Part shown: positions 1-48,697 of the stretch, piece after piece
How the letters are laid out: each line of letters opens with the position of its first letter
Numbering within the stretch: the stretch's first letter is position 1
Source of the DNA: Hyaloraphidium curvatum SAG 235-1
Taxonomy: Eukaryota; Fungi; Monoblepharomycota
Assembly (NCBI GenBank): GCA_025558095.1
Contig: JAIVFI010000032.1
Coordinates: forward strand, 248,001-312,000
Reading direction: 5' to 3'
Length of the DNA stretch: 64,000 bases
Position numbers and translations under genes: made by a program
The notes under the pieces: generated by a model
Told to the model about the DNA's origin: nothing
Database searches by the model: none
The model's input: the letters and a program-made list of their open reading frames with translations, nothing else

Positions 1-337
1 TTTTCCTGTCCTTATTCATGGACTTTGAGATGAAGCTGGCAATGGAGTTGAGGGCCTTCTCCTTCTGCCGCCTCGCTTTGATCGTGGGCTCGAACTCCTT
101 GATGCTAAGAGCCCAGAGCCAGGTCTCCATGTTCCACTCGCGGCCTAGTGCTTCCAATCTAGTCTGCAGCTGCTGGCGCCGCTCCGCATTTGCTGAACAG
201 TCTGCCACACAGGAGAAGGCCCTCAACTCCATTGCCAGCTTCATCTCAAAGTCCATGAAGGACAGGAAAACTGGGAAAATGAAAAAGACACACGACGACG
301 ATGAACTTTGCAATTAGCAGCAAACTCATGGTGTAAC
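1..337. mobile_element. Fold-back (inverted) fragment of a non-LTR retrotransposon 3' end
   Basis: 1-201 is the reverse complement of ~11812-12008 and 211-337 matches ~11950-12072 forward. 1-63 and 211-270 form an inverted repeat with a 3-nt indel. Confidence 0.8.
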
Positions 338-687: not shown

Positions 688-911
688 TGTTGGAATGGAT
701 CGTTGCTACGATTCTGTATCAATAGGGAGTCTATTGGCGTGTGGGGATACTTGGGTACGACCGGAGGGGTCATCTAGGGACTTGTCATCGCAAGGGAATG
801 GACAACGGGTCAACGTGAAACTGTCCCTCTCCCCATCCCGTCCATCTGAGTTCTGACCCGGTTCAGACCACTGGGGCTACGTCTTCCCCACGCCCCATAG
901 CCACTCCAACA
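688..911 (+). repeat. 5' LTR of the Copia element
   Basis: Identical by eye to 6039-6262; 7-bp terminal inverted repeats. Confidence 0.97.
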
Positions 912-924
912 GGTCTATGAGCCC
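912..924 (+). promoter_or_regulatory. Primer-binding site, half-tRNAiMet (anticodon-arm) type
   Basis: GGTCTATGAGCCC directly after the LTR resembles the copia/Ty5-type GGTTATGAGCCC with one extra C. Confidence 0.75.
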
Positions 925-1085
925 AAAGGGTGTCCAGAACACTTTTGCGCGGCTTTGAAGTTGCGTGTGGCGCAACCAGCCGAGGGGACCGCATCCAGCT
1001 GAGTCTGGTCTCCAGGACCGCCTGGGTGGACTCAGTGGGCGCTAGAAAGAGCGCGTGAAGCACTAGAGGTGCTGCGGCGGCCGGG

Positions 1086-4000
1086 ATGGAGATTTCGGTC
1101 GGAGGAACCCGTGTGGCATTGTTTGGGGGGGCCAAGCTCGAGGAAACCGGATCACAAACCAATTACCAGGATTGGTTAATTGACATCAAGGCCAAGCTCC
1201 AGAGGGAGAGTGACTGGCAAATTGTGACTGGAAAGGTGGCAAAGCCCGTGGTAGGGCAGGGAGGAAAGACGGAAGATGATTTGTCAGCCTGGAACACGAA
1301 GGACCAGAAAGCTCAAGGGATCCTGGTAGGATCACTCTCTATTGGTCTCAAAAGGATCTGCAGCAGGATGGACACTGCTAAGGACATCTGGGACTACCTA
1401 GAGAAGCGTTTCGTGACGGAAAATGTGGCGCAGCAAGGGAACGCCGAGGTCCAGTACTACAGCTTTGAGTTCATCAAAACCGACCGGGTGGCTCCGAATT
1501 TTACCCGCTTCATGCAGAAAAAGATGGAAGTTGAAGCACTGGGAAAGCTGAAGGGAGATGACGATGATATGAGCATCTGGAGGAAAGTCCTGAAGGACCT
1601 ACCTGAGTTCGATCAAGTTCGGGCCGAGATTGACGGCATTTGGCTGGGAGCACAGACCAAACACGAGTGGAAGACTGAAAATGGAGTGAAGAAACACCCT
1701 ATCTTGAACGTTGCATACCTTCAGAAGAGGATGGAGATGGAAGAGGAGACTATGATCAAGCGAGCTGAGCAAAATGGTGATACGTACTCACCTGGGGCAG
1801 CCAACATAACCGTGAATCCCGCTCCAAACACGTTGATGTACGCTCTAAACCGTGGCAGGGGTCGCGGAGGATCACGGGGTGGCCATGGAGGTGACCGCGG
1901 GGGTTCAAGGGGTCGCGGGCGAGGGTTCGGAAATCGCGGGGGTCGGCAGGCCACGGCGGAGGGCGAAAACGGCTCGGGAATCACGTGCCTCTGCTGCGGG
2001 AAGGGTGGACACGTCAAGAAGGACTGCACCCATCGTGACAAAACCTGCAACAAGTGCGGAAAGGACGGTCATCTCGAGGCCGTGTGCTGGAGGAAGGACG
2101 ATGGGAAAACGGCACGAGAGCAGCAGAACACGCTCACCCTGGGCGATCTCCCCGATCTGGAAGATCGATTCGGCGCGTTCCTGTTCATGATGGAGGGCGG
2201 AATCGAGGGAAACGATGGGGAGACGACGGGGGACGGTGGATACGAAAAACCCCCGGAACACGTCGTGCACGCGGCGAAGACGGGCCAGGAGATGCGCGGC
2301 AGGCTGATGGGGGATAGCGGCGCGTCCGTGCACGCGACGGGAATCAGGGAACTGCTCTACGGCATCAAGCCGTGCGATGCAGTTGATGTTCGAATGGGAA
2401 AAGGGATCGCGCGTGCGATCGAAGTCGGAAAGCTCAAGATCAAGCTCACCAATTCTGGCGACATCGTCACCCTGGAAGATGTGCTTTTCATCAAAGATCT
2501 TCCTGCAACGCTCATTTCGATTGGGAGACTAGGGCAGATGGGATACTACACGCTTCTGGGTCCGGATGGAGGGGCCATCACCAAGGGCGGCGACGTGCGG
2601 GGCACTTGCCGCATAGATCGTCACGTTTACTATCTCAACGCGGAAATCCTCAACGAGCATGACGAACAGATCATGCTGAGTGCTCAGGAAGGGGATTTGA
2701 GCGCGGAGATTGCGCATGGGCGCTGCGGGCACTACCCGATCGCGGCACTCAGGAAGGTTCAACAGGCTGGGATTGTGGATGGATTGGAGGAGTACGTGTT
2801 TGCTGGAAACCACAACAACTTCTGTAAGGAGTGCGTGATGGGGAAGATGCATCAGTTGCCCTATCCGGAGTCGGAGCGGAAAGTCTCGCGGCCGTTTGAG
2901 CTGACTCACTGGGACCTGATACAATCGGACGTTGCAACGGTGCATGGAGAACGCTGGGCATTGCATGCAGTCGACGAGTACACTTCTGCGGAGTTTGCGT
3001 TCCTATTGAAGCACAAATCGGAGGCGGAGGACTGGATGATGCACTTTGCCGAGTGGGTGAAGAACCAGTTCAGCCTAAAGGTCGGATGCATGCGGGTCGA
3101 TCCCGGAGGTGAATTCTCGTCAAAACGGCTCGAAGCGTACTGCAAGAACGAGGGAATCAAGTTGGAATCGTCGGTAACGAATCGGCCTGCGCAGAACGGA
3201 GTCATTGAGCGGCGGAACCGGACGGCTGAGGAAGGGACCCGGACCATCCTGATCGACTCGAAAGCGCCGAAGTCGTTATGGGGATACGCACTGCATCATC
3301 ACATCAACACACGGAATCGTTTGCCGAACACAAAGACGTGGCAGAAAGGGTCTACGCCGTTTCAACTGCTGACTGGGAGACGGGCGAACATTAGCCACAT
3401 CCGACGTTTCGGAGAAACGTGTTACGCGATCGTCGACAAGGATAAGCGCGGCAAATGGGATGCTAAGGCGGTACAATGCCGCTACCTGGGAATGAGCTCG
3501 CGATCGAAGGCATTTACGGTCCAGAATCTTGAGACCGGGCGGATTTTTGACTCACGTGATGTCGTTTTCGAGGAACGCTGGTCAAACAAGACGCTCAAGA
3601 GCTACATGCAGGTTCTGGAAAGCAGAGTTTCGGTCGAAAAACTACCTGAGGACGCGGACCCGAGCGCTGTATTGAACCGTCGACTTGCAGTGGAGGAGTC
3701 GGCGCAGCCTGAGGAATTGGAGGCGTCACCGGAGACGCCACGGCGGGTCCGTTCCGCAGATCCAATCGACGACGGCAACCAGGAGCATCGTGGGACACAG
3801 GGAGACCGTGTGCAGCGTCAACCTGAGCGCCAGGAGGCCGGGGGAGGAGGTCAAAGACTGGAAGTTGGAGGTACTCAACATCAATCTTCAAGTTCCGGCA
3901 GCCGAGGCGCGGATTTACGTCTGTCACGCGATCAACGAGCTCAGAGCGAAAGTGAGGACGAGCTGGTGGCTCGTGGAAGAGGCTCTGGGAACAGTGGAAG

Positions 4001-5990
4001 TGGCAATCCAGGGGGAGGAAAGGCAGTTGGTGGATCGCAACTTTCTGGTGATCGTGCGGCTAGGGAAGCCACAGACCAACGTGGGGAGCCTGGAGGAGCA
4101 TCTTCATCAAGCAGCGGAGCTCAGGGAGGCGCTGGGGCGGCTGGAACGGGCTCTAAGATACCTTTACCTACAAGGTCATCCAGCAGAGCTCCAAGACCTC
4201 CTGGGGAGTGGTGGAAAGCCCCCAACACGAGCAACGAGAAGGAGATCAACGTGATCACGCTGGAATCGATCAATTTCCTGATGGAGGAGGTCCAGGACCA
4301 CCTGGACTGGCAGGGACACCTACCAACTTGGGAGGACATGGCACACATGGATGGAATCTTTGCTGCAAGCACTGGAGCACGTGTACCACGGAACTATGCA
4401 GAGGCAATGCGTTCAGAGGATCGTGAGATGTGGGCCAAGGCAATGGAACGTGAGATTGGCAACTTCAAGAGCAGAGATGCGTACAACATCATGGGCTTGC
4501 CTGAGGGCAAGGAAAAATTCGCGGTTGGAAGCCAATTTGTATTTGACCTCAAACCTGGAGCTGATGGCAGCATTGTGGGGGAGGAAAACTACAAGGCTCG
4601 ATGGGTGGCAAGGGGTGATTGGCAGGATCCATCTTCTTTTGGTCAATCCTTTGCACCTGTACCTTCTGCTGCTGCTGTACGGCTTTTCTTTTGGCTTTCT
4701 GCTCAGAACAACATGATTGTACATCAGGCAGATGCAAACGCGGCATTCCTACAGGCTAAGCTCCAGGAGAACGAGGAAGTTTACTTGTATCCAGCTCAAG
4801 GGATGGATTTACCTGAGTTTACTGATGGAAGACCTACTGTAATTCGACCTGGAGTCGCGGTTTATGGACTTGTGCAAGCTGCACGTGCTTGGCACAGACA
4901 CCTGCACGAGATACTCACGGAGATGGGGCTTATACGTTGCTCAAAGGAGTACTGCATCTACTTTCTGCGGCAAGATGATTGGTTTCTTTTGATGATTATT
5001 CATGTGGACGACTTTGGATGTAGCTCAACGGACGAAAAACGGACGATTGCATTTCTTGAGGAGCTGGGAAAGCGGATTAAGATACGTTATATGGGTCGCA
5101 TGAAAAAGTTCCTGGCTTTGGAAATCAAGCAGGACGAGAAGGCTGGAACAATCACAATCAAGCAGTCCAACTACATCAAGAAAGCCTTGGAGGACTTCGG
5201 AATGGACACTTGCAATGCAGTTTCTGTACCTATGGACGTTGGGGTGAAGCTCAGGAAACGGAAGACGGAGTTGTCTGCTGCTGAGGAGCAGGAAATCGGA
5301 CGTTTTCCGTTCAGATCAATGGTGGGAAGTTGGATGTATGCTATGAACTTCACCAGGCCAGACATTGCCTTACCTATTATCACGGAGAGCCGTCATGGGA
5401 TGGCACCTACTCGTGAAGCAGTGGAGCAAGTCAAGAAGACAACCAGATACTTGAAGGGAACAGCTGATTTTGGCTTGGTTTACAAGAGGGATCCGAATCT
5501 GGACATGACCAAAGCATTGCATGGATATGCAGACGCCAGTTTTGCTGGGGATCTTGACACTGGGAAGTCAACAACTGGGGTTGTAGTGATGATGGGGAAC
5601 GGTCTTATCATCTACAAGTCGCAACTGCAACCAGTGGTGGCTCTTTCAACAACAGAGGCCGAGTACATGGCTCTATCTTATGCTGGACGTCAAGTTGCGT
5701 GGCTAAGGAGTTTATTGGAGGAATTGGGATTTCCTCAGCAAGGGCCAACAGTCATCAAGGAGGACAATGAGGGGGCTATCAAGCTGGCGCAGAATCCTGT
5801 CTTTCATGAACGTACCAAGCACATTGGAGTGCAGTACCATTTTGTGAGGGAGAAAATTGATAGTGGAGAGATACAGCTGGAGTACATCAACACAGAGGAC
5901 CAGCTTGCGGATCTGCTCACCAAACAGCTACCAAGGGAGAAGTTTCAACGTTTCAGGGCACTTATGGGAATTGTAGAGATTCGTGACTAA
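1086..5990 (+). CDS. Copia Gag-Pol polyprotein (Gag, two CCHC knuckles, PR, IN, RT, RNase H), 1634 aa
   Basis: CLCCGKGGHVKKDC and CNKCGKDGHLEAVC knuckles; PR DSGAS; IN HGRCGH..CKEC, HWD, DPGGEF, QNGVIER; RT YKARWVARG, HVDD; RNase H YADASFA, STTEAEY, EDN, DQLADLLTK. PR-IN-RT-RH order is diagnostic of Copia. Confidence 0.98.
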   Translation: MEISVGGTRVALFGGAKLEETGSQTNYQDWLIDIKAKLQRESDWQIVTGKVAKPVVGQGGKTEDDLSAWNTKDQKAQGILVGSLSIGLKRICSRMDTAKDIWDYLEKRFVTENVAQQGNAEVQYYSFEFIKTDRVAPNFTRFMQKKMEVEALGKLKGDDDDMSIWRKVLKDLPEFDQVRAEIDGIWLGAQTKHEWKTENGVKKHPILNVAYLQKRMEMEEETMIKRAEQNGDTYSPGAANITVNPAPNTLMYALNRGRGRGGSRGGHGGDRGGSRGRGRGFGNRGGRQATAEGENGSGITCLCCGKGGHVKKDCTHRDKTCNKCGKDGHLEAVCWRKDDGKTAREQQNTLTLGDLPDLEDRFGAFLFMMEGGIEGNDGETTGDGGYEKPPEHVVHAAKTGQEMRGRLMGDSGASVHATGIRELLYGIKPCDAVDVRMGKGIARAIEVGKLKIKLTNSGDIVTLEDVLFIKDLPATLISIGRLGQMGYYTLLGPDGGAITKGGDVRGTCRIDRHVYYLNAEILNEHDEQIMLSAQEGDLSAEIAHGRCGHYPIAALRKVQQAGIVDGLEEYVFAGNHNNFCKECVMGKMHQLPYPESERKVSRPFELTHWDLIQSDVATVHGERWALHAVDEYTSAEFAFLLKHKSEAEDWMMHFAEWVKNQFSLKVGCMRVDPGGEFSSKRLEAYCKNEGIKLESSVTNRPAQNGVIERRNRTAEEGTRTILIDSKAPKSLWGYALHHHINTRNRLPNTKTWQKGSTPFQLLTGRRANISHIRRFGETCYAIVDKDKRGKWDAKAVQCRYLGMSSRSKAFTVQNLETGRIFDSRDVVFEERWSNKTLKSYMQVLESRVSVEKLPEDADPSAVLNRRLAVEESAQPEELEASPETPRRVRSADPIDDGNQEHRGTQGDRVQRQPERQEAGGGGQRLEVGGTQHQSSSSGSRGADLRLSRDQRAQSESEDELVARGRGSGNSGSGNPGGGKAVGGSQLSGDRAAREATDQRGEPGGASSSSSGAQGGAGAAGTGSKIPLPTRSSSRAPRPPGEWWKAPNTSNEKEINVITLESINFLMEEVQDHLDWQGHLPTWEDMAHMDGIFAASTGARVPRNYAEAMRSEDREMWAKAMEREIGNFKSRDAYNIMGLPEGKEKFAVGSQFVFDLKPGADGSIVGEENYKARWVARGDWQDPSSFGQSFAPVPSAAAVRLFFWLSAQNNMIVHQADANAAFLQAKLQENEEVYLYPAQGMDLPEFTDGRPTVIRPGVAVYGLVQAARAWHRHLHEILTEMGLIRCSKEYCIYFLRQDDWFLLMIIHVDDFGCSSTDEKRTIAFLEELGKRIKIRYMGRMKKFLALEIKQDEKAGTITIKQSNYIKKALEDFGMDTCNAVSVPMDVGVKLRKRKTELSAAEEQEIGRFPFRSMVGSWMYAMNFTRPDIALPIITESRHGMAPTREAVEQVKKTTRYLKGTADFGLVYKRDPNLDMTKALHGYADASFAGDLDTGKSTTGVVVMMGNGLIIYKSQLQPVVALSTTEAEYMALSYAGRQVAWLRSLLEELGFPQQGPTVIKEDNEGAIKLAQNPVFHERTKHIGVQYHFVREKIDSGEIQLEYINTEDQLADLLTKQLPREKFQRFRALMGIVEIRD

Positions 5991-6038
5991 CTTTGGGGAT
6001 TTCTGGACACTTCTTGGGAATCTTGCAACGAGGGGGAG

Positions 6039-6262
6039 TGTTGGAATGGATCGTTGCTACGATTCTGTATCAATAGGGAGTCTATTGGCGTGTGGGGATA
6101 CTTGGGTACGACCGGAGGGGTCATCTAGGGACTTGTCATCGCAAGGGAATGGACAACGGGTCAACGTGAAACTGTCCCTCTCCCCATCCCGTCCATCTGA
6201 GTTCTGACCCGGTTCAGACCACTGGGGCTACGTCTTCCCCACGCCCCATAGCCACTCCAACA
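6039..6262 (+). repeat. 3' LTR of the Copia element
   Basis: Follows the PPT, identical to the 5' LTR, followed by TSD GCTCT. Confidence 0.97.
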
Positions 6263-6494
6263 GCTCTGTCTCAATGCATGATCGCTGTGGCATGCCAGCA
6301 TGCTTCAGGCTAGGATTTTGGGAGTGATTGTGCTGCTCTGGTCTTCAAGCGGTGTTGGTTTGTTGGCCGACATGCCACATGCCTTGAGCCACGCTCTGGC
6401 TACGAACGACAATATGAGATGCATATCGTCCCATGAAGGGAGGAGATGTCACCTGTGCGGTCAGGTCGTGCTATACGGTCGAGGACCGGAAAAG

Positions 6495-6718
6495 TGTTGG
6501 AGTGGCTATGGGGCGTGGGGAAGACGTAGCCCCAGTGGTCTGAACCGGGTCAGAACTCAGATGGACGGGATGGGGAGAGGGACAGTTTCACGTTTACCCG
6601 TTGCCCATTCCCTTGCGATGACAAGTCCCTAGATGACCCCTCCGGTCGTACCCAAGTATCCCCACACGCCAATAGACTCCCTATTGAGATAGAATTGTAG
6701 CAACAATCCATTCCAACA
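6495..6718 (-). repeat. LTR (3' LTR of the minus-strand element)
   Basis: Reverse complement of the 224-bp LTR; 6 substitutions versus 688-911 by manual comparison. Confidence 0.95.
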
Positions 6719-7102
6719 CTCCCCCTTGTTGCAAGATTCCCTCCAGTGCATATCAATCCCAACAACGTAGCAATGCATAGGTTCCAACACTCCCCCTCGT
6801 TGCAAAGTTGTCTCCCAGTTATGTTCTCCAGTTGCTATCCAGTTGCAATTATCAAGTCACTTTCAATACTCCCCTCCTGTCAAGAATCCCTGAGAAATCT
6901 CCAGTTTCACTTTCAAATCTCCACAAATCCCCGAAGTGCTTTGAAATGCTCAAACTTAGCTATCCATTTTTGGTCCTTCAAGTCCAGTCATTTGCATCAC
7001 AGTGTTATGCACCTCTTGCTAGTTTCCTGCACACAGACTGGTTCTGCCTCGTTGCACATTGCACAGATCCTTCACGTAAGGTCTGCTGATCTAAATCAAA
7101 GC

Positions 7103-9121
7103 TCAACAGTCCCATTGCATGCGTGGTTTCTCCAGGTCCTTCCACCTGGTCAGTTTCCACCATTCCAGAGTCTTCCTAGAGTATCTGGCTCTTCCATTGG
7201 TCACATGCTCTCCTCCTTTAGAGTCCATCCAGTTGTCCTTCAAGCTTGTTGGCAAAGCACTCTGATGATGTCCTTGCAACACCTCCTCCACGTGTCCCGT
7301 GTTGACTGGATCAAAAGCACATCTCCCAGAAAGTGATTCACCAACAGCAAGTCTCCCAGAAAGTGAGTCACCCTTCATCACTCCCCCTGAATCGCTTTCT
7401 TCTGCTCCTTCCAGGAATGGGTCGTTTCCTGTACAGTGCCCAAGAACATCTGTATCACCAATACCCTTTGTCTCTGGTTCACCACCCTCAGGATCCAGTT
7501 TGTTGCAAGCATCAGATCTCACAGACTCTCCATGCAGCTCCACCTCCTCCTGAATCATGTCTGGTTCGGAGTGATCTTCCATCAAAATGTCCCTGTCAAG
7601 TTCGCAAAGCAGCTGTTCATTTGCATCTTTAGTCTCCTTTCCCAAGTCAGCAACAAAATCTGTTTCAGCATCTCCATTCTGAACCAAATTCAAATCCCCC
7701 TGGTTGTCCAGCATGATCAAATCGTCTTGCATGAGTGTCTGCTGCATCCCTCCATATGATGCGTCCAATTTCTCAGCTCTGCTGAAGGTACTTCCACTTC
7801 CACAGTCAGGCCCTCCTCTGGTCAAGTCACACACCTCATGTCCTTCGAAATCCGAGCCTCTAGCTCCCTCTGCAAGGTAGGGATCATCCTCCACGATCTC
7901 TGCGTTCATCTGATACGAGCCGTTGTGCAAACTCAGTGTTCCCATGAGTTCACCCTCTGGGGAAAGAATATTGCCACCCTCTGGGCCCAACAGCACCAGG
8001 AATCCCATCTTCACCACGCTCTCAATCGATGGCAATGCTCCACATCGATCTCCAATGTTTGCATCCTCCATCAAAGTGATGATCTTCCCTGTCAAGAACC
8101 TCAGTTGTGTCTTCTGAATACCGCCCGCCATCGCCGATCCCTTCGTGGTCCCAAAGTCACGTAGGCCACAAACATCCTCTCCAAAAAGTGGTTCCTCGAC
8201 CTCCAACACGTTCCTAGACGCGTTATTTTCCTCCATGGTCCTGTCCCCGAGAGCATTCACGTGTGCTGCCTTCCTGGAACCCTCCAGCACTTCGCGCCCG
8301 CGCTCCTCCCCGTGGAACGCGTTCTCCTTCCAATCCTTGACTCCCAGTGCCACTACCATATCCACGAGGTTCTCCTTGATCAGATTATCGTCCAAGGTAA
8401 GCTCCATCTGCTTCTCCTCACGCGCATTGGTCTCCGCGATCCTCTTACAGAGTGTCTCCCAGTGTCCAGGTTCCCCGCACCGAAGACACGCGTTTCCGCG
8501 GTGTAAGCAATTCCTGGCGTAATGCCCAACCTCTCCACACATATAGCAAGCGTTTCTCGACGCGTTTCTCGTGCTTCCACGTGATTGATCACCACCTCGC
8601 TCGACACCGCGTCGTTTCTGACCTCTGACACGTTTTCCATCGCCATCTCGGCCTCCCTTGGATGCTCCTCCATCTGATCTTCGAGTTTCCACGGTCGATT
8701 GTGCTCCCTGGCACTCCTCATTGGCGCTCCGTCCCGCTGTGCCTTCAGACGTGTTCCAGAGTTCGTTCTCCCTCGCGAATTTCCTCTCCAGACCGTCCCA
8801 GATCTCCCTGGCAGTGTCCACAGAGAAGAATACACGTTGCAGTGCCCTTGGTAGAGTCTCCAGGATCAATCCCTGGGCCACTTGGTCGTGTGCAATCCAG
8901 TCGTCCATGTCCTTGGTCGTGGCCCCTGCCACACCCACAGTTGGCTTTGCCATTGCTCCTGTCACGTAGGGCAACAGTCCTTCTATCTGGAGCTTCTTTT
9001 CCATCGCAAGCTTCCAGTCTCGGAGGTTCCTTCCGTACTCCCTGAGAATGGTCCCCTGTACCACTCTCCATATTCTGCCTCCCATCGTGAACTCAATTCC
9101 ACGATCCCGCAAGCTCCTCAT
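7103..9121 (-). CDS. Diverged Gag N-terminus, two CCHC knuckles, pseudo-protease and acidic tail (no integrase or RT)
   Basis: Aligns by eye to the neighbouring Gag (DTAREIWDGLERKF vs DTAKDIWDYLEKRF). Knuckles CYMCGEVGHYARNC and CLRCGEPGHWETLC. Protease region has ENNAS in place of DSGAS. Ends near an EWWK motif shared with the IN-RT linker. First ATG at 9121. Confidence 0.85.
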   Translation of the reverse strand: MRSLRDRGIEFTMGGRIWRVVQGTILREYGRNLRDWKLAMEKKLQIEGLLPYVTGAMAKPTVGVAGATTKDMDDWIAHDQVAQGLILETLPRALQRVFFSVDTAREIWDGLERKFARENELWNTSEGTAGRSANEECQGAQSTVETRRSDGGASKGGRDGDGKRVRGQKRRGVERGGDQSRGSTRNASRNACYMCGEVGHYARNCLHRGNACLRCGEPGHWETLCKRIAETNAREEKQMELTLDDNLIKENLVDMVVALGVKDWKENAFHGEERGREVLEGSRKAAHVNALGDRTMEENNASRNVLEVEEPLFGEDVCGLRDFGTTKGSAMAGGIQKTQLRFLTGKIITLMEDANIGDRCGALPSIESVVKMGFLVLLGPEGGNILSPEGELMGTLSLHNGSYQMNAEIVEDDPYLAEGARGSDFEGHEVCDLTRGGPDCGSGSTFSRAEKLDASYGGMQQTLMQDDLIMLDNQGDLNLVQNGDAETDFVADLGKETKDANEQLLCELDRDILMEDHSEPDMIQEEVELHGESVRSDACNKLDPEGGEPETKGIGDTDVLGHCTGNDPFLEGAEESDSGGVMKGDSLSGRLAVGESLSGRCAFDPVNTGHVEEVLQGHHQSALPTSLKDNWMDSKGGEHVTNGRARYSRKTLEWWKLTRWKDLEKPRMQWDC

Positions 9122-9271
9122 CTTGAGCACGCTCTCTTTCAGCGTTCTCCAACCTGTCCAGGCAGTTCCAGAACCAGCGTTGGTAGATTGCGGCTCCCCC
9201 GGCTATGTGCGCCACCCGGCAACTTCACAGCCGCATCTTTCGTCTTTCACAACCCTTTGGGCTCATAGACC

Positions 9272-9344
9272 TGTTGGAGTGGCTATGGGGCGTGGGGAAG
9301 ACGTAGCCCCAGTGGTCTGAACCGGGTCAGAACTCAGATGGACG
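9272..9344 (-). repeat. Partial LTR (73 bp, U5 end) adjacent to the PBS
   Basis: Reverse complement of the last 73 nt of the LTR; breaks at ...CAGATGGACG. Confidence 0.93.
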
Positions 9345-9345
9345 T

Positions 9346-9569
9346 TGTTGGAATGGATTGTTGCTACGATTCTATCTCAATAGGGAGTCTATTGGCGTGT
9401 GGGGATACTTGGGTACGACCGGAGGGGTCATCTAGGGACTTGTCATCGCAAGGGAATGGACAACGGGTAAACGTGAAACTGTCCCTCTCCCCATCCCGTC
9501 CATCTGAGTTCTGACCCGGTTCAGACCACTGGGGCTACGTCTTCCCCACGCCCCATAGCCACTCCAACA
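9346..9569 (+). repeat. Full LTR in inverted orientation forming the right terminus
   Basis: 224 bp. Shares the four diagnostic variants of the 6495-6718 LTR (GATTGTTG, CTATCTCAAT, GGTAAACG) and differs from it at 2 sites. Confidence 0.95.
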
Positions 9570-9574
9570 AAAAG

Positions 9575-10426
9575 AGCGCACCTTGAGCAGAGACCGCTGC
9601 AGAGCATACCACACATGGTGTCAGCGTCTGCCACGTCCGCTGTTGGAACCCACAATGTCCAGAAAACTGCGCCAAAAGTGACGAAAGCGGTGTAGGTGCC
9701 CAGCGCGGTGATGGCGCAGAACGGGAAGAGGGATAGGAGAGACTGGTCCACAAGAAAGAGAAGCGCGGTCCATGTCGGGGTCGTTCCCAGGCATCGAGAT
9801 GCTGGGCACGGGCACAGCGGATCGCCTTCGACGTGCTCGAGGAGGCTGGGGCGCTGCGGTCCAGGCAGCTGCTCGGGGTCCTGCGCCTTGGACGCCGTCT
9901 CGCCGGAGCCGTCGCCCTGGAGCCATCTGACGAGCGGCACCAAGAGGTGCCCAGAAAGGTCCTGCTTCGGCGCGGGTGCGGACGCGCTATTTCCTGTTGC
10001 GGTGATGCGGACGTCCCGGGCCGTCCGGATCTTCGCCAACGCCCACCAAGTGATGTCTCCCACCCATGGGAAGATGGCGGCAATCGTGCCGACAATGATC
10101 TGTCGCCGCCCAAAGAAGTGGCCATAGTCGCTGTTGAGCACAATCACGGCCGCCAAGAGCGCGGCGTGGGAGGCCGCGGCCACGTAGCCCCGCACGACGC
10201 CGGAGGCGAGCCATGGAGCGAAGAACGCGTTGGTGGAGTTCACGGCGCTCAGCAGGCGGAACGGCGCGAGCGTGCGCGCCATGCTCTTCGCGGTCACGGG
10301 GTCCGGCGCGCGCAGTGCTTCCGCGGGGTCGTCCGAGGGCGGCGGGGCCAGCGCCGACCAGGTCGGCACGGGCACCTGCGCCTCAGGGAAGAGGAGAAGG
10401 TAGTCGGACGCGCTGAAAATTGGCAT
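9575..10426 (-). pseudogene. Multi-pass membrane protein gene of unknown family, truncated or interrupted at the LTR element
   Basis: GC-rich ORF with hydrophobic segments and a DPLCPCPASRC motif; the ORF runs into the LTR at 9569. Confidence 0.55.
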
Positions 10427-10899: not shown

Positions 10900-12071
10900 G
10901 GACCATGCAAAGGCTGTTGACTAGAAGACGATGACGAAGATATACTGCTGTGCAAATAAGTAAAGCCACATACAGGAGCCAGGAGCTGGAAGAGGGTCAA
11001 CAGCATCAAGCTCCTGGCATATCAACTCACGTCAACCGGGCAGAGCAACGACCGTGTGCACGGCAGGGGGCAAAAAGATGATGCTGCCTACGGAATCTGG
11101 CTCCGGGACATCAGGGAGCAGCCTGGGATGCAGAGTCCTGACTTCCAGCTGAAGCTCTACAGCATGAAGGTCAAGGCAATGGGCCAGTATGGAACCCGTT
11201 CATTGTCGAGATGCCGAAGGAGGAGTACCTTGCCAGGGAAAGCACCAGGGACAAAGTGACATGCATGGCCCTTCGTGCTGTCACTCACCAGCCCAAATCT
11301 ACCTCCCTGACTTGTCTGTACGCGATCACTGGCCAGTCCCTCTTGCAGTTCATGACCATGAGTCGGCTCTCAAGTTCCTCATGCGCATCAAAACAGCTGA
11401 CCCTGCATTGTACCTGCTCTACAAGGAGGTCAAGACCGGGGCGCTGCCTTCCTGAGGGAACTACTTGTATACTATGGTGGAGAGGAGGGGAGGGAGATGT
11501 GGGAGAAGGACACTTCTTCATGGGCCAAAGAGACTGTGGCGAATCTTGTGAAGGGCGAGTTCAGGGAGATCAATGCCCAGAAGCTCAAGGACAATGCCAA
11601 GCTGCACTTCTGGAGGATGTGTGGCATGACCTTTAGCCACATTGCACCATCCCTGATCCGGGTGGAGAAGCACCGGAGGGATTTCCAGAAGCTGCTCTGC
11701 TCCACCCATGACCTGGAGGTGGAGACAGACAGGTACCAGGACTTGAGGTGCAGCAGAGGGTGTGCAAACATGACCCTGAGCACATTGGAGACGAACAACA
11801 TTTTCTGTTCCACTGTTCAGCAAATGAAGAGCGGCGCCAGAAGCTGCAGACCAGACTGGAAGCACTGGGCCACGAGTGGAACATGGAGACCTGGCTCTGG
11901 GCTCTTAGCATAAAGCAGTTCGAGCCCACAATCAAACTGAGGTGGCAGAAGGAGAAGGCCCTTGACTCCATTGCCAGCTTCATCTCAAAGTCCAAGAAGG
12001 ACAGAAAACGGGATAAAGTGAAAAAGGTGCATGACAACGAACTTCAAATTAGCAGCAAACTGATGGTGTAA
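10900..12071 (+). mobile_element. Degenerate, 5'-truncated non-LTR (LINE) retrotransposon ORF2 remnant
   Basis: Frameshifted post-RT motifs ELERVNSIKLLAYQLTSTG, KLYSMKVKAMGQYG, CSTHDLEVETDRY and the C-terminal zinc motif RVCKHDPEHIGDEQHFLFHC; CpG-poor. Confidence 0.75.
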
Positions 12072-12383
12072 CCAGTGGGGCCCTGCATCATGCCTTGATG
12101 TCAGAACCCAAATGGTAGTGCATGAACGGCAGCAGAGAATATGTTGAAATTGCTGTCGATGGCAAGGCAGGCGTATTTTTGCTCAAGGTGAACTCATCGG
12201 TGGTGGCTGGTAATTGAGGATACCATGGGGCCGGCGACAAGATGCCTGGTAAGACTCAAAGGGGAACCAGGAAGCATCTTGTTCCGCAATGTCCTGTACA
12301 TTTCAACCACTGAGTCGCCAGGCACCTTCCCGACGCCACGCATGGTCCGCTGCCGAGCACAGTCCACTCGCCAGGCGCGGCCC

Positions 12384-31518: not shown

Positions 31519-32892
31519 CTATGTCGACATGCTGCAGTACGCCCGGTAGAAGGTCGCACCGCTGCCACGGTCCAAACGGAATCCCACGGGACAACCCGCC
31601 CCGACGAAGAAGATGTGTCCCTTTGCGGCCGGCACATCCGCGCCTCCGGCCGACAACACCGCCTCTCCCTCTGTGCAGATCAGTATGCTCGGCCCCGCGA
31701 GCTCGGCAAACTCGTCCGTGGGCACCTTTGGCGTCAGCGTCGTCCGCACGATCGAGAACTCGTCGATCGGGGGGTCGTACAGCCTCGACGCCCCAGTCTT
31801 CCCGACCGGATCGCCCTCCAGCACTTGGTCGCGCGCCGGACCGTAGTTGTAGGTCAGCATCGCGACGAGGGTCTCGACGTCCTTGTGCTTCGGGGTGAGG
31901 CCGGCGCGCACGACGTTGTCGGACGCGGCCATGCACTCGACGCAATCTGGCGGGAGTCGGTCGGTGAGCGTTCCTGGGTCCGCCGGGCACGGGTGACGGC
32001 GAACCTCCGGACAGGTAGGCATGCGGCTCGTTGGCGCCCAGATAGATGGCCTGGTCCGGCGCGAGGCGGATGTAGTTGAGCATCATGACGGCGAAGCAGC
32101 CAATGTCGCCGCCGGGAAACTGCGAGTCCAGCCGCACGACGAGCTCCTCGACGGAACCCGGCAAGGCGGGTTTGCCCGCCTTGAGCCGGGCCACCAGGGC
32201 GGCGAGCTGCTTGGCCACGACCGAGGCGTCCGCCTCCATCATGGCGGCAAACAGGGTCCGCAGGGCTTCCTTGCCCTTGGCGTCCTTGGCGGGCCCCTCG
32301 ACGGCGACGGCGCTGCGGAACGCCTGGGCAGCGTCGCCCACGACGGCGGCAAACTCGGGGAAGGCGGCCAGGTTCGCGGCGATCTCGTCCAGCGGCCGGA
32401 AGCCGCACAGGGCCTCGAACTCCGTGAGTGCGATGGCCATCTCCGGCTTGTGGTTCGGGTCCTTGTACAGGTCCGGGCGCGAGGCGTGCAGGCGCTGCGC
32501 GAGCGCCTTGTCGGGGTGCGCCTGGATGCTCAGGGCCTTGCGGATCGACAGCACCTTGAACAGGAACGGCAGGTCGTTGCCGTATGCGCGCGCGATGTCG
32601 GGGCCCAGGGCGGCGGCGGGGTCGGCGCGCACGAGGTCCGCGAGCGAGCCGGCGTGGGGACCGACGACCCGCGCCGGCGCCGACGGGTGCGTGCCCATCC
32701 ACAGCTGGCGGGGGCCGGCCGGCGTGAGCATGCAACGCAGCGGGAGCGGGGCGCCGCGCGCACCTCGGCGTACGGCGTCGCGGCGTCGAGTGGCGGGCCG
32801 GGCGTCGCGGCGGCGAGCTCGGCGACCTTCGACTCGCCGCCCAGCTTGCCCCAGTCGTACGACTGCGTGGCGCCGGCGATGCGCACCGCCAT
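31519..32892 (-). CDS. PMI40: Mannose-6-phosphate isomerase (type I)
   Basis: QSYDWGK, PYAE|LWMGTHPS, LPFLFKVLSIRKALSIQAHP, YKDPNHKPEM, ANEPHAY, ECMAASDNVVRAGLTPK. Confidence 0.96.
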
Positions 32893-33040
32893 GGCGGAGG
32901 GGCGGAGGGGCGCGGAGGGCGCTGGCGGGGGAGGCGGCTGCGGAGACTGCGTCCGGAGATGGAGACCCCAACGGACCCCTCGCACCGCGCGTGCGGACCA
33001 ATGGCTTGATCACATTCTCCCCCCCCCATAGTGCGCAGCG

Positions 33041-36000
33041 ATGGACGAAGGTGGGTCCGCCGCCGATCCCGCCGCCGCCGCTGACGCCTCGGCAGACGTT
33101 GACGCTCAGATTAAGGAGGCGCAACAACGGCGAGAAGTCGCCCGTGCTGCCGCGCAAGCCAAGGCCGCGAACCGGGCGACGTTCGACGACGAGCTCTACT
33201 CGCGCAAGGAGAGCCGCTTCGAGGGCTACGACACGTCGATCGCCGCCGGCCCGGCCGCGGACGACGACGACGGCGATGCGCCGATGGAGGACGCCGGCTA
33301 CGGCCGCCGCGCAAACATCACCGCCCCGAAGGAGCTGCTGCGCGAGCTGGAGGAGTCGGGCGCCGACTCGGACCCGCTGGCTGGCCGCGTCGAGTCGCGC
33401 CGCATCGCGGACCGCGAGGATGACTACCACAAGCGGCGGCTCAACCGCGTGCTGTCGCCGCAGCGCGTCGACGCCTTCCAGGGCGGCGCCGCAGACCACG
33501 CCGAGGCGCGCTCGTACAAGGAGGTCATGATGGAGGCCGACATGGAGAAGGAGCGCGCTCGTCTGATGGCAAAGATCGAGGCGGATCGCAAGGCGGGCGC
33601 CGATTCGGGCGACCGCAAGGCGCTGCCTGCCGCCGAGGCCGCACAGCCGGCGGCAAAGAAACGGCGGTGGGACGTTGCCGTGCCGGCCGAGGAGGAGGCA
33701 CCGAAGAAAAAATCGGAATGGGAGGAGGACGAGCAGCCGAAGGAGGTCAAGCGGCGCAACCGGTGGGACGAGACCCCGGTCGCCGCCCCCTCGGGCGGCT
33801 CGGCGTGGGACGCCCCCACGCCGCGGGCCGACGGCTCGGGGGACTTTGGTGCGACGCCATCGGGCCGGAAGAGGTCCCGCTGGGACGAGACCCCGGTCGG
33901 CGTCAACGTGATGGCCACGCCGGTGGGCGGCTACGGCCTGGTCACCCCGACCCCGGGCCAGATCTCCGTGCCCATGACCCCGGACGTTGCCAACGCGCTG
34001 CGCTGGGAGCGCGAGCTCGACTACCGGAACCGGCCCTGGACGGACGAGGAGCTGGACGCCATCTTCCCGACCGAGGGCTACAAGATCCTCGACCCCCCGT
34101 CGAGTTACGTGCCCATCCGCACACCGGCCCGCAAGCTCATGGCCACCCCGACCCCCATGGCGGGCCAGGCCGGGGCGGGGTACATGCTGCCGGAGGAGAA
34201 CCGGGTGGCCATGTTCGACATGCCTACCGAGATCCCCGGCGTCGGCAGCCTGTCCTTCTTCAAGCCTGAGGACATGCAGCACTTTGGCAAGCTGCTCGAC
34301 GACAAGGACGAGGAGTCGCTGCCGCTCGACGAGCTTAAAGAGCGCAAGATCATGCGGCTGCTCCTCAAGATCAAGAACGGGACCCCGCCGATGCGCAAGG
34401 CCGCGCTGCGGCAGATCACGGACAAGGCGCGCGAGTTTGGCGCCGGCCCACTCTTCAACCAGATTCTGCCCCTGCTCATGTCGCCGACGCTCGAGGACCA
34501 GGAGCGCCACCTGCTCGTCAAGGTCATTGACCGCGTGCTCTACAAGCTCGACGACCTCGTGCGTCCCTTCGTGCACAAGATCCTGGTCGTCATCGAGCCC
34601 CTGCTCATCGACGAGGACTACTACGCGCGCGTCGAGGGCCGCGAGATCATCAGCAACCTCGCCAAGGCCGCCGGCCTAGCGACCATGATCGCCACGATGC
34701 GTCCCGACATTGACCACGTGGACGAGTACGTCCGCAACACGACTGCGCGCGCCTTCTCCGTCGTCGCATCCGCTCTCGGCATCCCCGCGCTCCTGCCGTT
34801 CCTCAAGGCGGTTTGCAAGAGCAAGAAGTCTTGGCAGGCCCGCCACACGGGCATCAAGATCGTGCAGCAGATCGCCATCCTCATGGGCTGCGCCATCCTG
34901 CCGCACCTCAAGCAGCTGGTCGAGTGCATCGGCCACGGACTGGAGGACGAGCAGCAGAAGGTCCGCACCATCACGGCGCTGGCCATCGCCGCGCTGGCCG
35001 AGGCCGCCGCGCCCTACGGCATCGAGTCGTTCGACAGCGTGCTCAAGCCGCTGTGGACGGGCATCAAGAAGCACCGCGGCAAGGGCCTCGCCGCTTTCCT
35101 CAAGGCCATCGGCTACATCATCCCGCTCATGGACGCCGAGTACGCCAACTACTACACCAAGGAGGTCGTCGTGATCCTCATCCGCGAGTTCCAGTCGCCG
35201 GACGAGGAGATGAAGAAGATCGTTCTCAAGGTCGTCAAGCAGTGCGCCGCGACCGAGGGCGTGACCCCGCAGTACATCAAGGAGGAGATCCTGCCCGAGT
35301 TCTTCAAGCACTTCTGGGTGCGCCGCATGGCCCTCGACCGCCGCAACTACAAGCAGCTCGTCGAGACGACGGTGGAGCTGGCCAACAAGGTCGGCGCCTC
35401 CGAGATCGTCACCAAGGTCGTCGACGACCTCAAGGACGAGTCGGAGCCGTACCGCAAGATGGTCATGGAGACCATCGACAAGGTCGTCAGCGCGCTCGGG
35501 TCCTCGGACATCGACGACCGGCTAGAGGAGCGTCTCATCGACGGCATCCTGTACTCGTTCCAGGAGCAGACCGTCGAGGACGTCGTCATGCTGAACGGCT
35601 TCGGCACCGTTGTCAACGCGCTCGGCGGCCGCGTCAAGCCGTACCTGCCCCAGATCACCTCCACGATCCTCTGGCGGCTCAACAACAAGTCGGCCAAGGT
35701 GCGCCAGCAGGCTGCCGATCTCATCTCGCGCATCGCCGTGGTCATGAAGACGTGCGGCGAGGAGAAGCTCATGGGGCACCTCGGCGTGGTGCTGTACGAG
35801 TACCTGGGCGAGGAGTACCCCGAAGTGCTCGGGTCCATCCTGGGCGGGCTCAAGGCCATCGTCAACGTCATCGGCATGCAGAACATGACGCCCCCGATCA
35901 AGGACCTGCTTCCGCGGCTGACGCCCATCCTCAAGAACCGGCACGAGAAGGTGCAGGAGAACACGATCGATCTCGTGGGGCGCATCGCCGACAGGGGTGC

Positions 36001-36956
36001 AGAGTTTGTCAGCGCGAGGGAGTGGATGCGGATCTGTTTCGGTGGGTTCACGATGCGTGCCCTGCCGGGACCTTTCATAGTTCTAACTTTCGTTGCGTGC
36101 CGCAGAGCTGCTCGACATGCTCAAAGCGCACAAGAAGGCCATCCGGCGTGCCGCCGTCAACACTTTCGGGTACATCGCCAAGGCCATCGGTCCCCAGGAT
36201 GTGCTCGCGACGCTCCTCAACAACCTCAAGGTCCAGGAGCGCCAGAACCGTGTCTGCACGACCGTCGCCATCGCTATCGTCGCGGAGACGTGCTCGCCTT
36301 TCACGGTGCTTCCGGCCCTCATGAACGAGTACCGGGTGCCCGAGCTCAACGTGCAGAACGGCGTCTTGAAGTCTTTGTCGTTCCTGTTCGAGTACATTGG
36401 CGAAATGGGCAAGGACTACATCTACGCCGTCACCCCGCTGCTTGAGGACGCGCTGATGGATCGGGACCTTGTGCACCGGCAGACTGCATGCACGACCGTC
36501 AAGCGTGAGTGTTTGGAAGCGCTCTCTTTGTTTGCCGAATTACTAACAGCTTTGGCCTTCAGACATGGCTCTCGGCGTCGTGGGCCTCGGGTGCGAAGAT
36601 GCCCTGATCCACCTGCTCAACTACGTCTGGCCCAACATCTTCGAGACGAGCCCGCACGTCATCAACGCGGTCATGGACGCCGTGGATGGGATCCGCATGG
36701 CCGTCGGACCGGCGCTTATCCTCAACTACGTGCTTCAGGGTCTATTCCACCCGGCACGGCGGGTCCGCGAGGTCTACTGGAAGGTGGGTTGCCGTTTGCG
36801 AAGCGAGACCCGCTCAGCATGCTGACTGAGCTACCTTCCCAGATCTACAACAACATCTACATGGCCCACGCAGATGCGCTGGTGTCCTACTATCCTCGGG
36901 TGGATGACGACGAGAGGAACATCTACACCCGATACGAGCTGGACTTGATCGTTTGA
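33041..36956 (+). CDS. SF3B1: Splicing factor 3B subunit 1
   Basis: RWDETP ULM motifs, [11 protein letters not shown], and HEAT repeats ([40 protein letters not shown]). Confidence 0.98.
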
Positions 36957-48542: not shown

Positions 48543-48697
48543 CGTGCGCTTGCTGGACTTGGACCGAATACCACTTCTAAGCGAGAGGGTGTGGGGCGGC
48601 TTCCAATCGCGGCTTTTCCCGCCGTTCAGCCCCAGCAAACAGAGAACACGGCGTCACGGCGACCGGGCCCACCCGGGCCCCTGGCCGCGAGTCCGCG

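What the first reader, a model, noticed from the sequence alone, without database searches (positions are those of the whole stretch)
6495..9569. Non-autonomous Copia partner with a preserved Gag and dead-protease ORF that uses the autonomous element's LTRs
Seen: the LTRs differ from the autonomous neighbour at only 4-6 of 224 sites. Identity extends 20 nt into the PBS/leader (GGTCTATGAGCCCAAAGGGT) and ~22 nt around the PPT, then drops sharply. The ~670-aa internal ORF is deeply diverged yet has no stop. It keeps the Gag N-terminal half but lacks the second half of the capsid region, and keeps both CCHC knuckles. It has a protease-like region with DSGAS replaced by ENNAS, no IN or RT, and a KFEHFKALRGFVEI RNase H tail remnant (6913-6957). 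Inference: an old lineage of parasite or modulator elements that periodically adopts the helper's LTRs while selection keeps its own protein. That protein could self-package the RNA or act as a dominant-negative Gag/protease, by analogy with Ty1 p22 copy-number control or TR-GAG elements.
Basis: partly seen in the sequence, partly recalled or inferred. Interest (0 to 1): 0.85.

Follow-up and report, generated by a model that had tools for sequence, protein, structure and literature searches.

The report
Defective Copia element borrowing neighbour's LTRs
A 3.1-kb crippled Copia retrotransposon in the fungus Hyaloraphidium curvatum keeps a half-capsid, RNA-binding, dead-protease protein. It carries almost exact copies of its intact neighbour's end repeats, a kind of hitch-hiker already described in plants, and this copy was inserted in an abnormal form.

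Summary
Element B (6495-9569, minus strand) has LTRs 97-98% identical to the intact Copia element A (688-6262). Identity stops 20 nt into the PBS and 23 nt upstream of the PPT side. B has a 675-codon open frame with a Gag N-terminal domain, two CCHC knuckles and a protease homologue reading ENNAS instead of DSGAS. It has no IN or RT, and an out-of-frame RNase H tail remnant.

New points:
- The two "LTRs" are inverted relative to each other. The real 5' LTR is only its last 73 nt, then one extra base, then a full inverted LTR. The whole unit has a 5-bp duplication (AAAAG), so it was integrated as an aberrant cDNA with two U5 ends.
- Two fossil PPT+LTR-start units lie upstream of the active PPT, consistent with repeated 3'-end replacement.
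- A relative-rate test shows B's protease decaying (23 vs 7 unique changes, p=0.005). Its Gag N-domain and knuckles evolve no faster than A's.

No other copy could be reached, so family size and dN/dS remain untested. The kind is known from plants (TR-GAG, Sabrina GAG-Pro, Quinta/Cereba, soybean LTR swapping). I score it as a moderately interesting new member in an early-diverging fungus.

The parts
6490..6494 (.). Target-site duplication AAAAG, lower copy
   Evidence: Read directly. The same pentamer lies at 9570-9574.
6495..6718 (-). B 3' LTR (224 nt, TGTTGG..CCAACA), minus orientation
   Evidence: 97.3% identical to A's LTR, with 6 differences.
6719..6741 (-). Active PPT block (GGGAATCTTGCAACAAGGGGGAG), near-identical to A 6016-6038
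   Evidence: The inverted-repeat arm extends to 6741. 95.7% identity over 23 nt.
6742..6818 (-). Fossil unit u2: an older PPT plus the first ~23 nt of an LTR start (TTGCAACGAGGGGGAG|TGTTGGAAC...)
   Evidence: Matches A 6023-6061. None of 2000 shuffles reaches the observed score.
6819..6912 (-). Fossil unit u1: the oldest PPT-like site plus a degenerate LTR start (GGAGGGGAG|TATTGAAAG), in the position of A's PPT just after the polyprotein stop
   Evidence: Matches A 6003-6046. None of 2000 shuffles reaches the observed score.
6913..6957 (-). Remnant of the polyprotein C-terminus (KFEHFKALRGFVEI plus stop), out of frame with the ORF
   Evidence: tblastn A 1619-1632, 64% identity. DNA 72% identical over 65 nt, E 7e-5. 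Sequence read.
7103..9130 (-). B open reading frame, 675 codons (first ATG at 9121, 672 aa; stop 7103-7105)
8729..9097 (-). Gag capsid N-terminal domain (aa 12-134); the capsid C-terminal half is absent
   Evidence: 40% identity to A 1-113. Pfam PF14223 positions 4-77 of 172. AF2 pLDDT above 90. Foldseek best match is the Drosophila copia capsid 8vvw_A over 95 columns, about half of the target.
8447..8548 (-). Two CCHC zinc knuckles (aa 195-228)
   Evidence: Pfam zf-CCHC and zf-CCHC_2. The conserved C, C, H, C residues are kept.
7871..8260 (-). Protease homologue without catalytic residues (aa 291-420; ENNAS at 8216-8230)
   Evidence: 33% identity to A's protease, E 6e-16. Keeps 4 of 18 conserved Copia protease columns, against 12 for A. 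No Pfam hit even at E<=10. Foldseek second match is XMRV protease, probability 0.8.
7106..7885 (-). Acidic C-terminal 260 aa of unknown origin (net charge -31), containing a 10-aa tandem repeat (7312-7371)
   Evidence: No Pfam hit, no homology to A by shuffle test, AF2 mean pLDDT 41.
9131..9251 (-). 5' leader with blocks conserved against A's leader
   Evidence: Alignment. blastn 75% identity over 84 nt, which includes the PBS.
9252..9271 (-). Primer-binding site, identical to A 912-931
9272..9344 (-). Only remaining part of a correctly oriented 5' LTR: its last 73 nt (LTR positions 152-224, inferred to be R-U5)
   Evidence: blastn LTR 152-224 matches 9344-9272 at 100%. Repeats D2 and I5-I7.
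9345..9345 (.). Single extra base (T) at the junction, not templated by LTR position 151
9346..9569 (+). Full LTR in inverted orientation relative to B; its U5 end faces outward and it carries the four B-type variants
   Evidence: 98.2% identical to A's LTR, plus orientation.
9570..9574 (.). Target-site duplication AAAAG, upper copy
688..6262 (+). Autonomous Copia element A: identical LTRs 688-911 and 6039-6262, PBS 912-931, ORF 1086-5990 (1634 aa; gag, PR, IN, RT), TSD GCTCT at 683-687 and 6263-6267

Best explanation
B is a semi-autonomous 'Gag plus dead protease' derivative of a Copia lineage distantly related to A. It has lost the capsid C-terminal half, integrase and RT/RNase H, so it must be copied and inserted by the enzymes of an A-type element.

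It qualifies for that help because it carries A-type cis signals: the whole LTR (promoter, R, integrase-binding ends), the PBS and the PPT. These were most likely acquired by copy-choice recombination inside a particle that co-packaged an A-type RNA and a B RNA. Minus-strand synthesis copied A's U5-R-U3-PPT, then switched onto B RNA inside B's old U3. The second strand transfer through the shared PBS then fixed the 5' boundary. That single switch explains both sharp identity boundaries. Two stacked fossil PPT+LTR-start units suggest it happened more than once.

B's protein keeps a constrained capsid N-domain and nucleocapsid knuckles. I infer that it binds its own RNA and enters or modulates A-type particles. 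Its protease fold is no longer an enzyme.

The copy in this window is an aberrant product. A cDNA that began at R (LTR position 152) was joined, with one extra base, to the U3 start of an inverted LTR. This gave a molecule with two U5 ends, which integrase inserted with a 5-bp duplication. Lacking a sense-oriented U3, this copy is probably a dead end.

Shown: the anatomy, the homologies, the TSD, the rate asymmetry. Inferred: trans-mobilisation, the recombination route, the protein's role, R starting at position 152.
For: - LTRs are 97-98% identical to A. Identity ends exactly at the PBS end and 23 nt before the LTR.
- The internal protein is only 28-40% identical to A, yet A is its closest relative among 1.84 billion representatives.
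- There are no IN or RT matches, and an out-of-frame RNase H tail remnant remains.
- Fossil PPT+LTR-start units u1 and u2 exceed all 2000 shuffles and occur only in B.
- TSD AAAAG lies at both ends of 6495-9569. A's own TSD is GCTCT.
- The junction joins LTR position 152 and LTR position 1, separated by a single T.
- Protease: 4 of 18 conserved columns kept, against 12 in A. Unique changes are 23 on B's branch and 7 on A's (p=0.005), with B ahead for all 43 outgroups. For Gag-NTD the counts are 13 vs 11, and for the knuckles 1 vs 4.
- The chance that the ORF stays open under neutral drift is 2% at 0.05 substitutions per site and 0.08% at 0.1.
- Codon-position GC pattern matches A's.
- AF2/Foldseek: a confident half copia capsid and a retropepsin-like beta domain.
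- Precedents: TR-GAG (PMC4350172), Sabrina_SA GAG-Pro with Wilma (PMC9744471), Quinta/Cereba (PMC11302176), RT-linked recombination and LTR swapping (PMC6894440).
Against: - Only one copy is available. No family, no dN/dS and no canonical B copy with direct LTRs have been seen.
- B's LTRs differ from this A copy at four shared sites, so the actual donor or helper may be another A variant.
- B's capsid N-domain is only about 37-40% identical to A's, so co-assembly is uncertain.
- The stacked PPT units could instead be tandem duplications made by RT slippage within B.
- The relative-rate test rests on a low-identity alignment (mean column identity 23%).
- There are no expression data.
- The inverted LTR could in principle be an assembly error.
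Confidence: 0.6

Rival explanations
1. One-off relic. B is a single, dead recombinant between an A-type element and a decayed distant Copia. It founds no family, and its ORF is open only because the last events were recent.
For: No second copy was found in the window, the protein libraries or metagenomes. This copy is structurally aberrant.
Against: The catalytic motif and 14 of 18 conserved protease columns have changed on B's lineage while 2 kb stayed open. Neutral drift of only 0.05-0.1 substitutions per site would almost always introduce stops. Gag-NTD and the knuckles show no rate acceleration. The protein libraries hold no A-like protein either, although A sits in the window with identical LTRs, so they do not sample this genome's transposons. 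The lack of B hits therefore says little.
Confidence: 0.15
2. Regulator. B's truncated Gag (N-domain plus nucleocapsid, no C-domain) acts mainly as a poison subunit or copy-number brake on A. This is functionally like Ty1 p22, and B might even be retained for the host's benefit.
For: The capsid lacks its C-terminal half but keeps a constrained N-domain and RNA-binding knuckles. It shares A's promoter and so would be co-expressed.
Against: There is no functional data. p22 is the opposite half of Gag. B sits inside LTRs with a TSD, so it behaves as a mobile element and not as a fixed host gene. This copy lacks a sense-oriented promoter.
Confidence: 0.1
3. RNA-level selection. The long frame is kept open because translation protects the RNA from nonsense-mediated decay or couples it to packaging. 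The protein beyond the knuckles has no function of its own.
For: The 260-aa acidic tail has no homologue, no Pfam hit and no predicted fold. The protease part is decaying yet remains open.
Against: Gag-NTD and the knuckles evolve at the same rate as in the autonomous A, which indicates constraint on the protein itself.
Confidence: 0.1
4. The inverted upper LTR is not an integration product. It would be an assembly error or a later chromosomal rearrangement of a normal B insertion.
For: The 73-nt inverted repeat with a 152-nt loop is the type of structure that can confuse assemblers.
Against: The 5-bp AAAAG duplication matches only if 6495 and 9569 are the two ends of one insertion. The plus-oriented LTR has no TSD of its own: GACGT at 9341-9345 against AAAAG at 9570-9574. 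No single inversion or deletion converts a normal 5' LTR into the observed order. Both junction partners are natural ends of reverse-transcription intermediates.
Confidence: 0.08

Closest known systems
TR-GAG elements of plants (TR-GAG1 of Coffea; PMC4350172)
   Same: Short (under 4 kb) LTR element with PBS, PPT and a 5-bp TSD. One ORF with a Copia-type gag domain (PF14223) and a zinc knuckle. TR-GAG1 also shows only faint aspartic-protease similarity without the motif.
   Different: B is fungal. Its capsid is truncated. Its protease homology to the partner is clear (E 6e-16). It carries a 260-aa acidic tail. Its LTRs are near-identical to a neighbouring autonomous element. Copy number is unknown.
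RLG_Sabrina_SA 'semi-autonomous' GAG-Pro elements with partner RLG_Wilma in wheat (PMC9744471)
   Same: Encodes Gag plus protease but no RT or IN. Shares PBS, LTR termini and promoter features with an autonomous partner.
   Different: Sabrina_SA is Gypsy, not Copia. It is described as having an intact GAG-Pro ORF, whereas B's protease lacks its catalytic residues. Sabrina and Wilma share hardly any sequence, whereas A and B share the whole LTR.
RLG_Quinta / RLG_Cereba pair in Triticeae (PMC11302176)
   Same: The non-autonomous partner keeps a diverged Gag ORF plus a domain of unknown function. Gag is conserved at protein but barely at DNA level. PBS, PPT and LTR termini are conserved. Recombination by template switching is inferred.
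   Different: Quinta/Cereba is a Gypsy centromeric pair and Quinta has a full Gag. Its status is population-validated with thousands of copies. B is a single copy with a half capsid.
[quoted passage not shown] 2010, Plant Cell 22:48; cited in PMC6894440 and PMC4079214, paper itself not held)
   Same: A non-autonomous family acquires the LTRs of its autonomous partner by recombination.
   Different: I know that study only by title and citation here. In B the swap is inferred from one copy, from sharp identity boundaries and from fossil PPT/LTR starts.
BARE-2 / BARE-1 of barley (as described in PMC4350172)
   Same: A two-component system of a defective Copia element and its autonomous partner.
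   Different: BARE-2 lacks functional Gag and keeps pol. B is the opposite.
Ty1 p22 copy-number-control protein (from my own knowledge)
   Same: A truncated Gag made by the element family that could interfere with particle assembly.
   Different: p22 is the C-terminal capsid part made from an internal start in a full Ty1. B keeps the N-terminal part plus nucleocapsid and is a separate element.

Membership tests
Ty1/Copia LTR retrotransposon (derivative) | Copia-type Gag domain (Pfam PF14223) | tested here: met
   E 1.3e-6, 28.4 bits against a cutoff of 27, but only profile positions 4-77 of 172. Best Foldseek match is the copia capsid 8vvw_A.
Ty1/Copia LTR retrotransposon (derivative) | LTRs ending TG..CA, adjacent PBS and PPT, 5-bp target-site duplication | tested here: met
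   TGTTGG..CCAACA ends, PBS 9252-9271, PPT 6719-6741, TSD AAAAG. Caveat: the upper full LTR is inverted, and only 73 nt of a direct 5' LTR remain.
Ty1/Copia LTR retrotransposon (autonomous) | PR-IN-RT-RNase H coding capacity | tested here: not met
   No IN or RT by Pfam or tblastn. Only a 14-aa RNase H tail remnant, out of frame.
Active retropepsin | Catalytic D-S/T-G motif | tested here: not met
   ENN at the aligned position. 4 of 18 conserved columns kept. No Pfam protease hit at E<=10.
TR-GAG (PMC4350172) | Length under 4 kb with LTR, PBS, PPT and a 5-bp TSD | tested here: met
   3075 bp, 6495-9569.
TR-GAG (PMC4350172) | Similarity to Gag but not to aspartic protease, IN, RT or RNase H | tested here: not met
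   Clear protease homology to A (E 6e-16) and an RNase H tail remnant. No Pfam protease hit, however.
TR-GAG (PMC4350172) | At least two copies in the genome | not testable with these tools
   The H. curvatum genome cannot be scanned here. No second copy in the window, the protein libraries or metagenomes.
Autonomous/non-autonomous partnership (criteria of PMC9744471) | Identical PBS and conserved LTR termini (integrase sites) | tested here: met
   The 20-nt PBS is identical and the LTR ends are identical.
Autonomous/non-autonomous partnership (criteria of PMC9744471) | Conserved promoter region | tested here: met
   Whole LTR 97-98% identical.
Autonomous/non-autonomous partnership (criteria of PMC9744471) | Active at the same time; matching population structure | tested here: inconclusive
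   A's LTR pair differs at 0 of 224 sites and B's at 2 of 224. This is one copy each, and B's two LTRs may come from different templates.
Ty1 p22-type restriction factor | Consists of the C-terminal capsid part of Gag | tested here: not met
   B keeps the N-terminal half and lacks profile positions 78-172.

The most novel reading that the evidence does not exclude
B represents a long-lived lineage in an early-diverging fungus. Its half-capsid/nucleocapsid protein would be an evolved adaptor or antagonist of the helper's particles. The lineage would survive by repeatedly re-synchronising its LTRs with the helper through template switching, a parasite-versus-helper arms race whose past rounds are recorded as stacked fossil PPT/LTR starts.
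Probability: 0.2. Interest if true: 0.65.

Novelty: new member of a known kind. Interest (0 to 1): 0.4.

Why it matters
- It extends the gag-keeping, LTR-sharing hitch-hiker pattern from flowering plants to a Copia pair in Monoblepharomycota. That suggests the strategy arises wherever LTR elements co-package RNAs.
- The stacked fossil PPT/LTR starts give a single-copy record of LTR replacement.
- The two-U5-ended insertion is a natural experiment. It marks the likely R boundary at LTR position 152 and shows that this integrase accepts two U5 ends.
- None of this changes current models. The value is as a clean, compact example that could be tested in a small fungal genome.

Tried and rejected
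Searches for more copies or relatives:
- Relatives of B's ORF: no hit in the search for homologous proteins. In 1.84 billion representatives the hits were CCHC-knuckle matches and weak partial Gag matches, plus one 28% Copia hit.
- Exact look-ups of A's polyprotein and of the host SF3b1 ORF: not on record.
- A's homologues are only about 35% identical plant or algal Copia, so the libraries hold no close relative of A or B.
- Metagenome scan for the U5-end+PBS 25-mer: 0 hits. Phage collection: no match.
- No further LTR, A-like or B-like sequence in the window.

Other tests that led nowhere:
- dN/dS between A and B was not computed. Protein identity of 28-40% with almost no DNA similarity means synonymous sites are saturated.
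- Homology of B's acidic tail to A's IN, linker or RT: not above shuffles. I therefore drop the 'EWWK' linker resemblance seen.
- Single-sequence AF2 of the tail: no fold, mean pLDDT 41.
- Consensus folding of the two leaders: too few sequences to mean anything.
- Removing A and B in silico to restore a host ORF. B sits about 5 codons before the end of a hypothetical ORF, so this gave no independent check of the empty site.
- No tRNA gene in the window to test PBS complementarity.

Rejected: the plus-oriented LTR as an independent solo-LTR insertion, because its flanks GACGT and AAAAG do not match.
Full report
CONTEXT

The window is nuclear DNA of the fungus Hyaloraphidium curvatum (Monoblepharomycota). 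A 1134-aa ORF at 33041-36442 is 100% identical to the NCBI H. curvatum SF3b1 protein. Other ORFs encode topoisomerase I and a fungal-type mannosyltransferase.

THE TWO ELEMENTS

Element A (plus strand) is an intact Copia element.
- Its 224-nt LTRs (688-911 and 6039-6262, TGTTGG...CCAACA) are identical.
- Its TSD is GCTCT and its PBS is 912-931.
- One 1634-aa ORF has gag (PF14223), the protease barrel (PF22936), integrase, the SH3-like domain and RT (PF07727).

Element B lies 232 bp downstream, tail to tail, on the minus strand (6495-9569).

CHECK OF THE OBSERVATION

- B's lower LTR differs from A at 6 of 224 sites and the upper at 4 of 224. Four differences are shared, at positions 14, 29, 31 and 124.
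- Identity with A continues exactly 20 nt into the PBS and 23 nt upstream of the LTR on the PPT side, then collapses.
- The internal ORF (7103-9130, 675 codons, first ATG at 9121) has no stop. The other two sense frames of the internal region carry 34 and 40 stops.
- B 12-122 aligns to A 1-113 at 40% identity. B 182-415 aligns to A 288-524 at 28%.
- Pfam sees only the first half of the Copia gag profile in B (positions 4-77 of 172), against 2-135 in A. It also sees the CCHC knuckles.
- The protease segment alone is 33% identical to A's (E 6e-16), with ENNAS in place of DSGAS.
- There is no integrase or RT.
- The RNase H tail remnant KFEHFKALRGFVEI plus a stop sits at 6913-6957, in another frame and downstream of the ORF stop.

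(1) The two LTRs are inverted relative to each other. In B's own orientation, the only correctly oriented 5' LTR sequence upstream of the PBS is the last 73 nt (LTR 152-224; window 9272-9344). Next comes one extra base (9345), and then a complete LTR in the opposite orientation (9346-9569) with its U5 end facing outward.
- The pentamer AAAAG flanks the unit at 6490-6494 and 9570-9574.
- The plus-oriented LTR has no TSD of its own: GACGT at 9341-9345 against AAAAG at 9570-9574.
- The whole unit, with a U5 end on both sides, was therefore integrated in one event.
- The junction joins LTR position 152 to LTR position 1. Position 1 is the natural 5' end of plus-strand strong-stop DNA. I infer that position 152 is the 5' end of the RNA, that is, the start of R.
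- So the junction looks like a joining of two natural ends of reverse-transcription intermediates, by end-to-end template switching or by end joining. This is inference.
- With no sense-oriented U3 upstream, this copy probably cannot make a proper genomic RNA. Its intact ORF therefore reflects the state of its source element.

(2) B's 3' untranslated region holds three successive PPT+LTR-start units.
- u1 (6819-6912) sits where A's PPT sits, just after the polyprotein stop, and is degenerate.
- u2 (6742-6818) has a perfect A-type PPT plus TGTTGGAA, and then diverges.
- u3 is the active PPT and LTR.
- Both fossils match A's PPT/LTR start better than any of 2000 shuffles.
- A has no such fossils, so B was the recipient of the LTRs.

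HOW THE LTRS WERE ACQUIRED (INFERENCE FROM THE STANDARD REVERSE-TRANSCRIPTION SCHEME; PMC6894440)

In a particle holding one A-type RNA and one B RNA, minus-strand DNA copies A's U5-R, then U3 and PPT. A single template switch then moves synthesis onto B RNA within B's old U3. Plus-strand strong-stop DNA carries A's U3-R-U5 and lands through the shared PBS. The product is LTR(A)-PBS-B internal-old PPT/U3 stub-PPT(A)-LTR(A). That is exactly the observed pattern, including both sharp boundaries. Two stubs suggest two rounds. Tandem duplication by slippage is the alternative.

IS THE PROTEIN MAINTAINED?

No second copy could be obtained, so dN/dS is not available. Three indirect tests were possible.
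- Conserved protease columns. Among 54 Copia proteases, 18 columns are at least 70% conserved. A keeps 12 and B keeps 4, having lost D, S, G, H and the GxG glycine.
- Relative-rate test. This used 43 outgroup Copia sequences on one alignment (mean column identity 23%).
  - Protease: 23 unique changes on B's branch and 7 on A's (p=0.005), with B ahead for all 43 outgroups.
  - Gag N-domain: 13 vs 11 (p=0.84).
  - Knuckles: 1 vs 4.
- Neutral simulation. Substitutions alone close the frame in 98% of runs at 0.05 substitutions per site and in 99.9% at 0.1.

B's codon-position GC pattern (0.59/0.435/0.56) mirrors A's. Together these argue that the protease has been non-functional for a long time. 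Over that time the frame, and specifically the capsid N-domain and nucleocapsid, stayed under constraint.

STRUCTURE

AF2 with a 45-sequence alignment gives:
- a confident helical Gag N-domain (residues 35-134, pLDDT above 90);
- moderately confident knuckles;
- a confident beta-rich C-terminal half of the protease fold (330-420);
- no confidence around the former catalytic loop (290-323).

Foldseek's top PDB matches are the Drosophila copia capsid and XMRV protease.
- The copia capsid 8vvw_A aligns over 95 columns with rmsd 2.3 A, covering about half of the target.
- XMRV protease has probability 0.8.
- E-values are weak (0.06-0.1) because the query has several domains.

The last 260 residues are acidic (net charge -31). 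They have no homologue, no Pfam match and no predicted fold.

COMPARISON WITH WHAT IS KNOWN

The anatomy and the partnership are established in plants.
- TR-GAG elements: Copia-type gag, a zinc finger and faint protease similarity (PMC4350172).
- RLG_Sabrina_SA: a GAG-Pro ORF, with Wilma as partner (PMC9744471).
- Quinta/Cereba: a diverged Gag plus an unknown domain, shared PBS, PPT and LTR termini, and recombination (PMC11302176).
- LTR swapping in soybean (Du et al. 2010, known here only through citations in PMC6894440 and PMC4079214).

B fails the strict TR-GAG filter because of its protease homology. It fails the p22 analogy because it keeps the opposite half of the capsid.

VERDICT

The kind of element is already known. 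The new aspects are:
- the host lineage;
- the catalytically dead but open protease region;
- the fossil record of 3'-end replacement;
- the aberrant two-U5-ended insertion.

I score interest at 0.4.

Noticed in passing
window 6263-6494: A and B sit tail to tail only 232 bp apart, and no other LTR or Copia sequence occurs in the remaining 54 kb. This may reflect a shared integration-site preference or chance. No tRNA gene is nearby.
   Followed up: partly
window 9346-10426: B inserted about 5 codons before the end of a 301-aa hypothetical ORF on the minus strand (no Pfam hit), replacing its C-terminus with LTR-encoded residues. The outward-facing inverted LTR would drive transcription antisense into that ORF.
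   Followed up: partly
window 1-337 and 11812-12072: Host sequence flanking the A+B cluster is repeated. 2-201 matches 11812-12008 in inverted orientation (90%), and 211-337 matches 11950-12072 in direct orientation (84%). 1-63 and 211-270 form a near-perfect palindrome. This looks like a small inverted or rearranged repeat, or a foldback-type element.
   Followed up: no
window 948-995 vs 9187-9235: The untranslated leaders of A and B keep conserved blocks (GCGGCTNTGAAGTTGCCGNGTGGCGCA...AGCCG.GGG..CCGCA) although the coding DNA is unalignable. This is a candidate packaging, dimerisation or extended tRNA-contact signal. Two sequences are too few to test a structure.
   Followed up: partly
window 912-931 and 9252-9271: The PBS contains TATGAGCCC, the complement of GGGCUCAUA, which includes a CAU anticodon. 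From memory, this resembles the internal 'half-tRNA' initiator-Met priming of Drosophila copia and yeast Ty5. It was not tested because no tRNA gene lies in the window.
   Followed up: no
window 7312-7371: A 30-nt tandem duplication (87% identical) inside B's acidic tail encodes GDSLSGRLAV / GESLSGRCAF.
   Followed up: no
window 53217-53475 and 54280-54538: A 259-nt direct repeat at 74% identity, 1063 nt apart. Not examined.
   Followed up: no
window 32001-34000 and 46001-50000: GC content rises to 71-73%, against 50-57% in the two Copia elements and about 60% elsewhere. The elements are markedly AT-richer than their host, and host genes have GC3 of 0.78-0.86 against 0.56-0.59 in A and B.
   Followed up: partly
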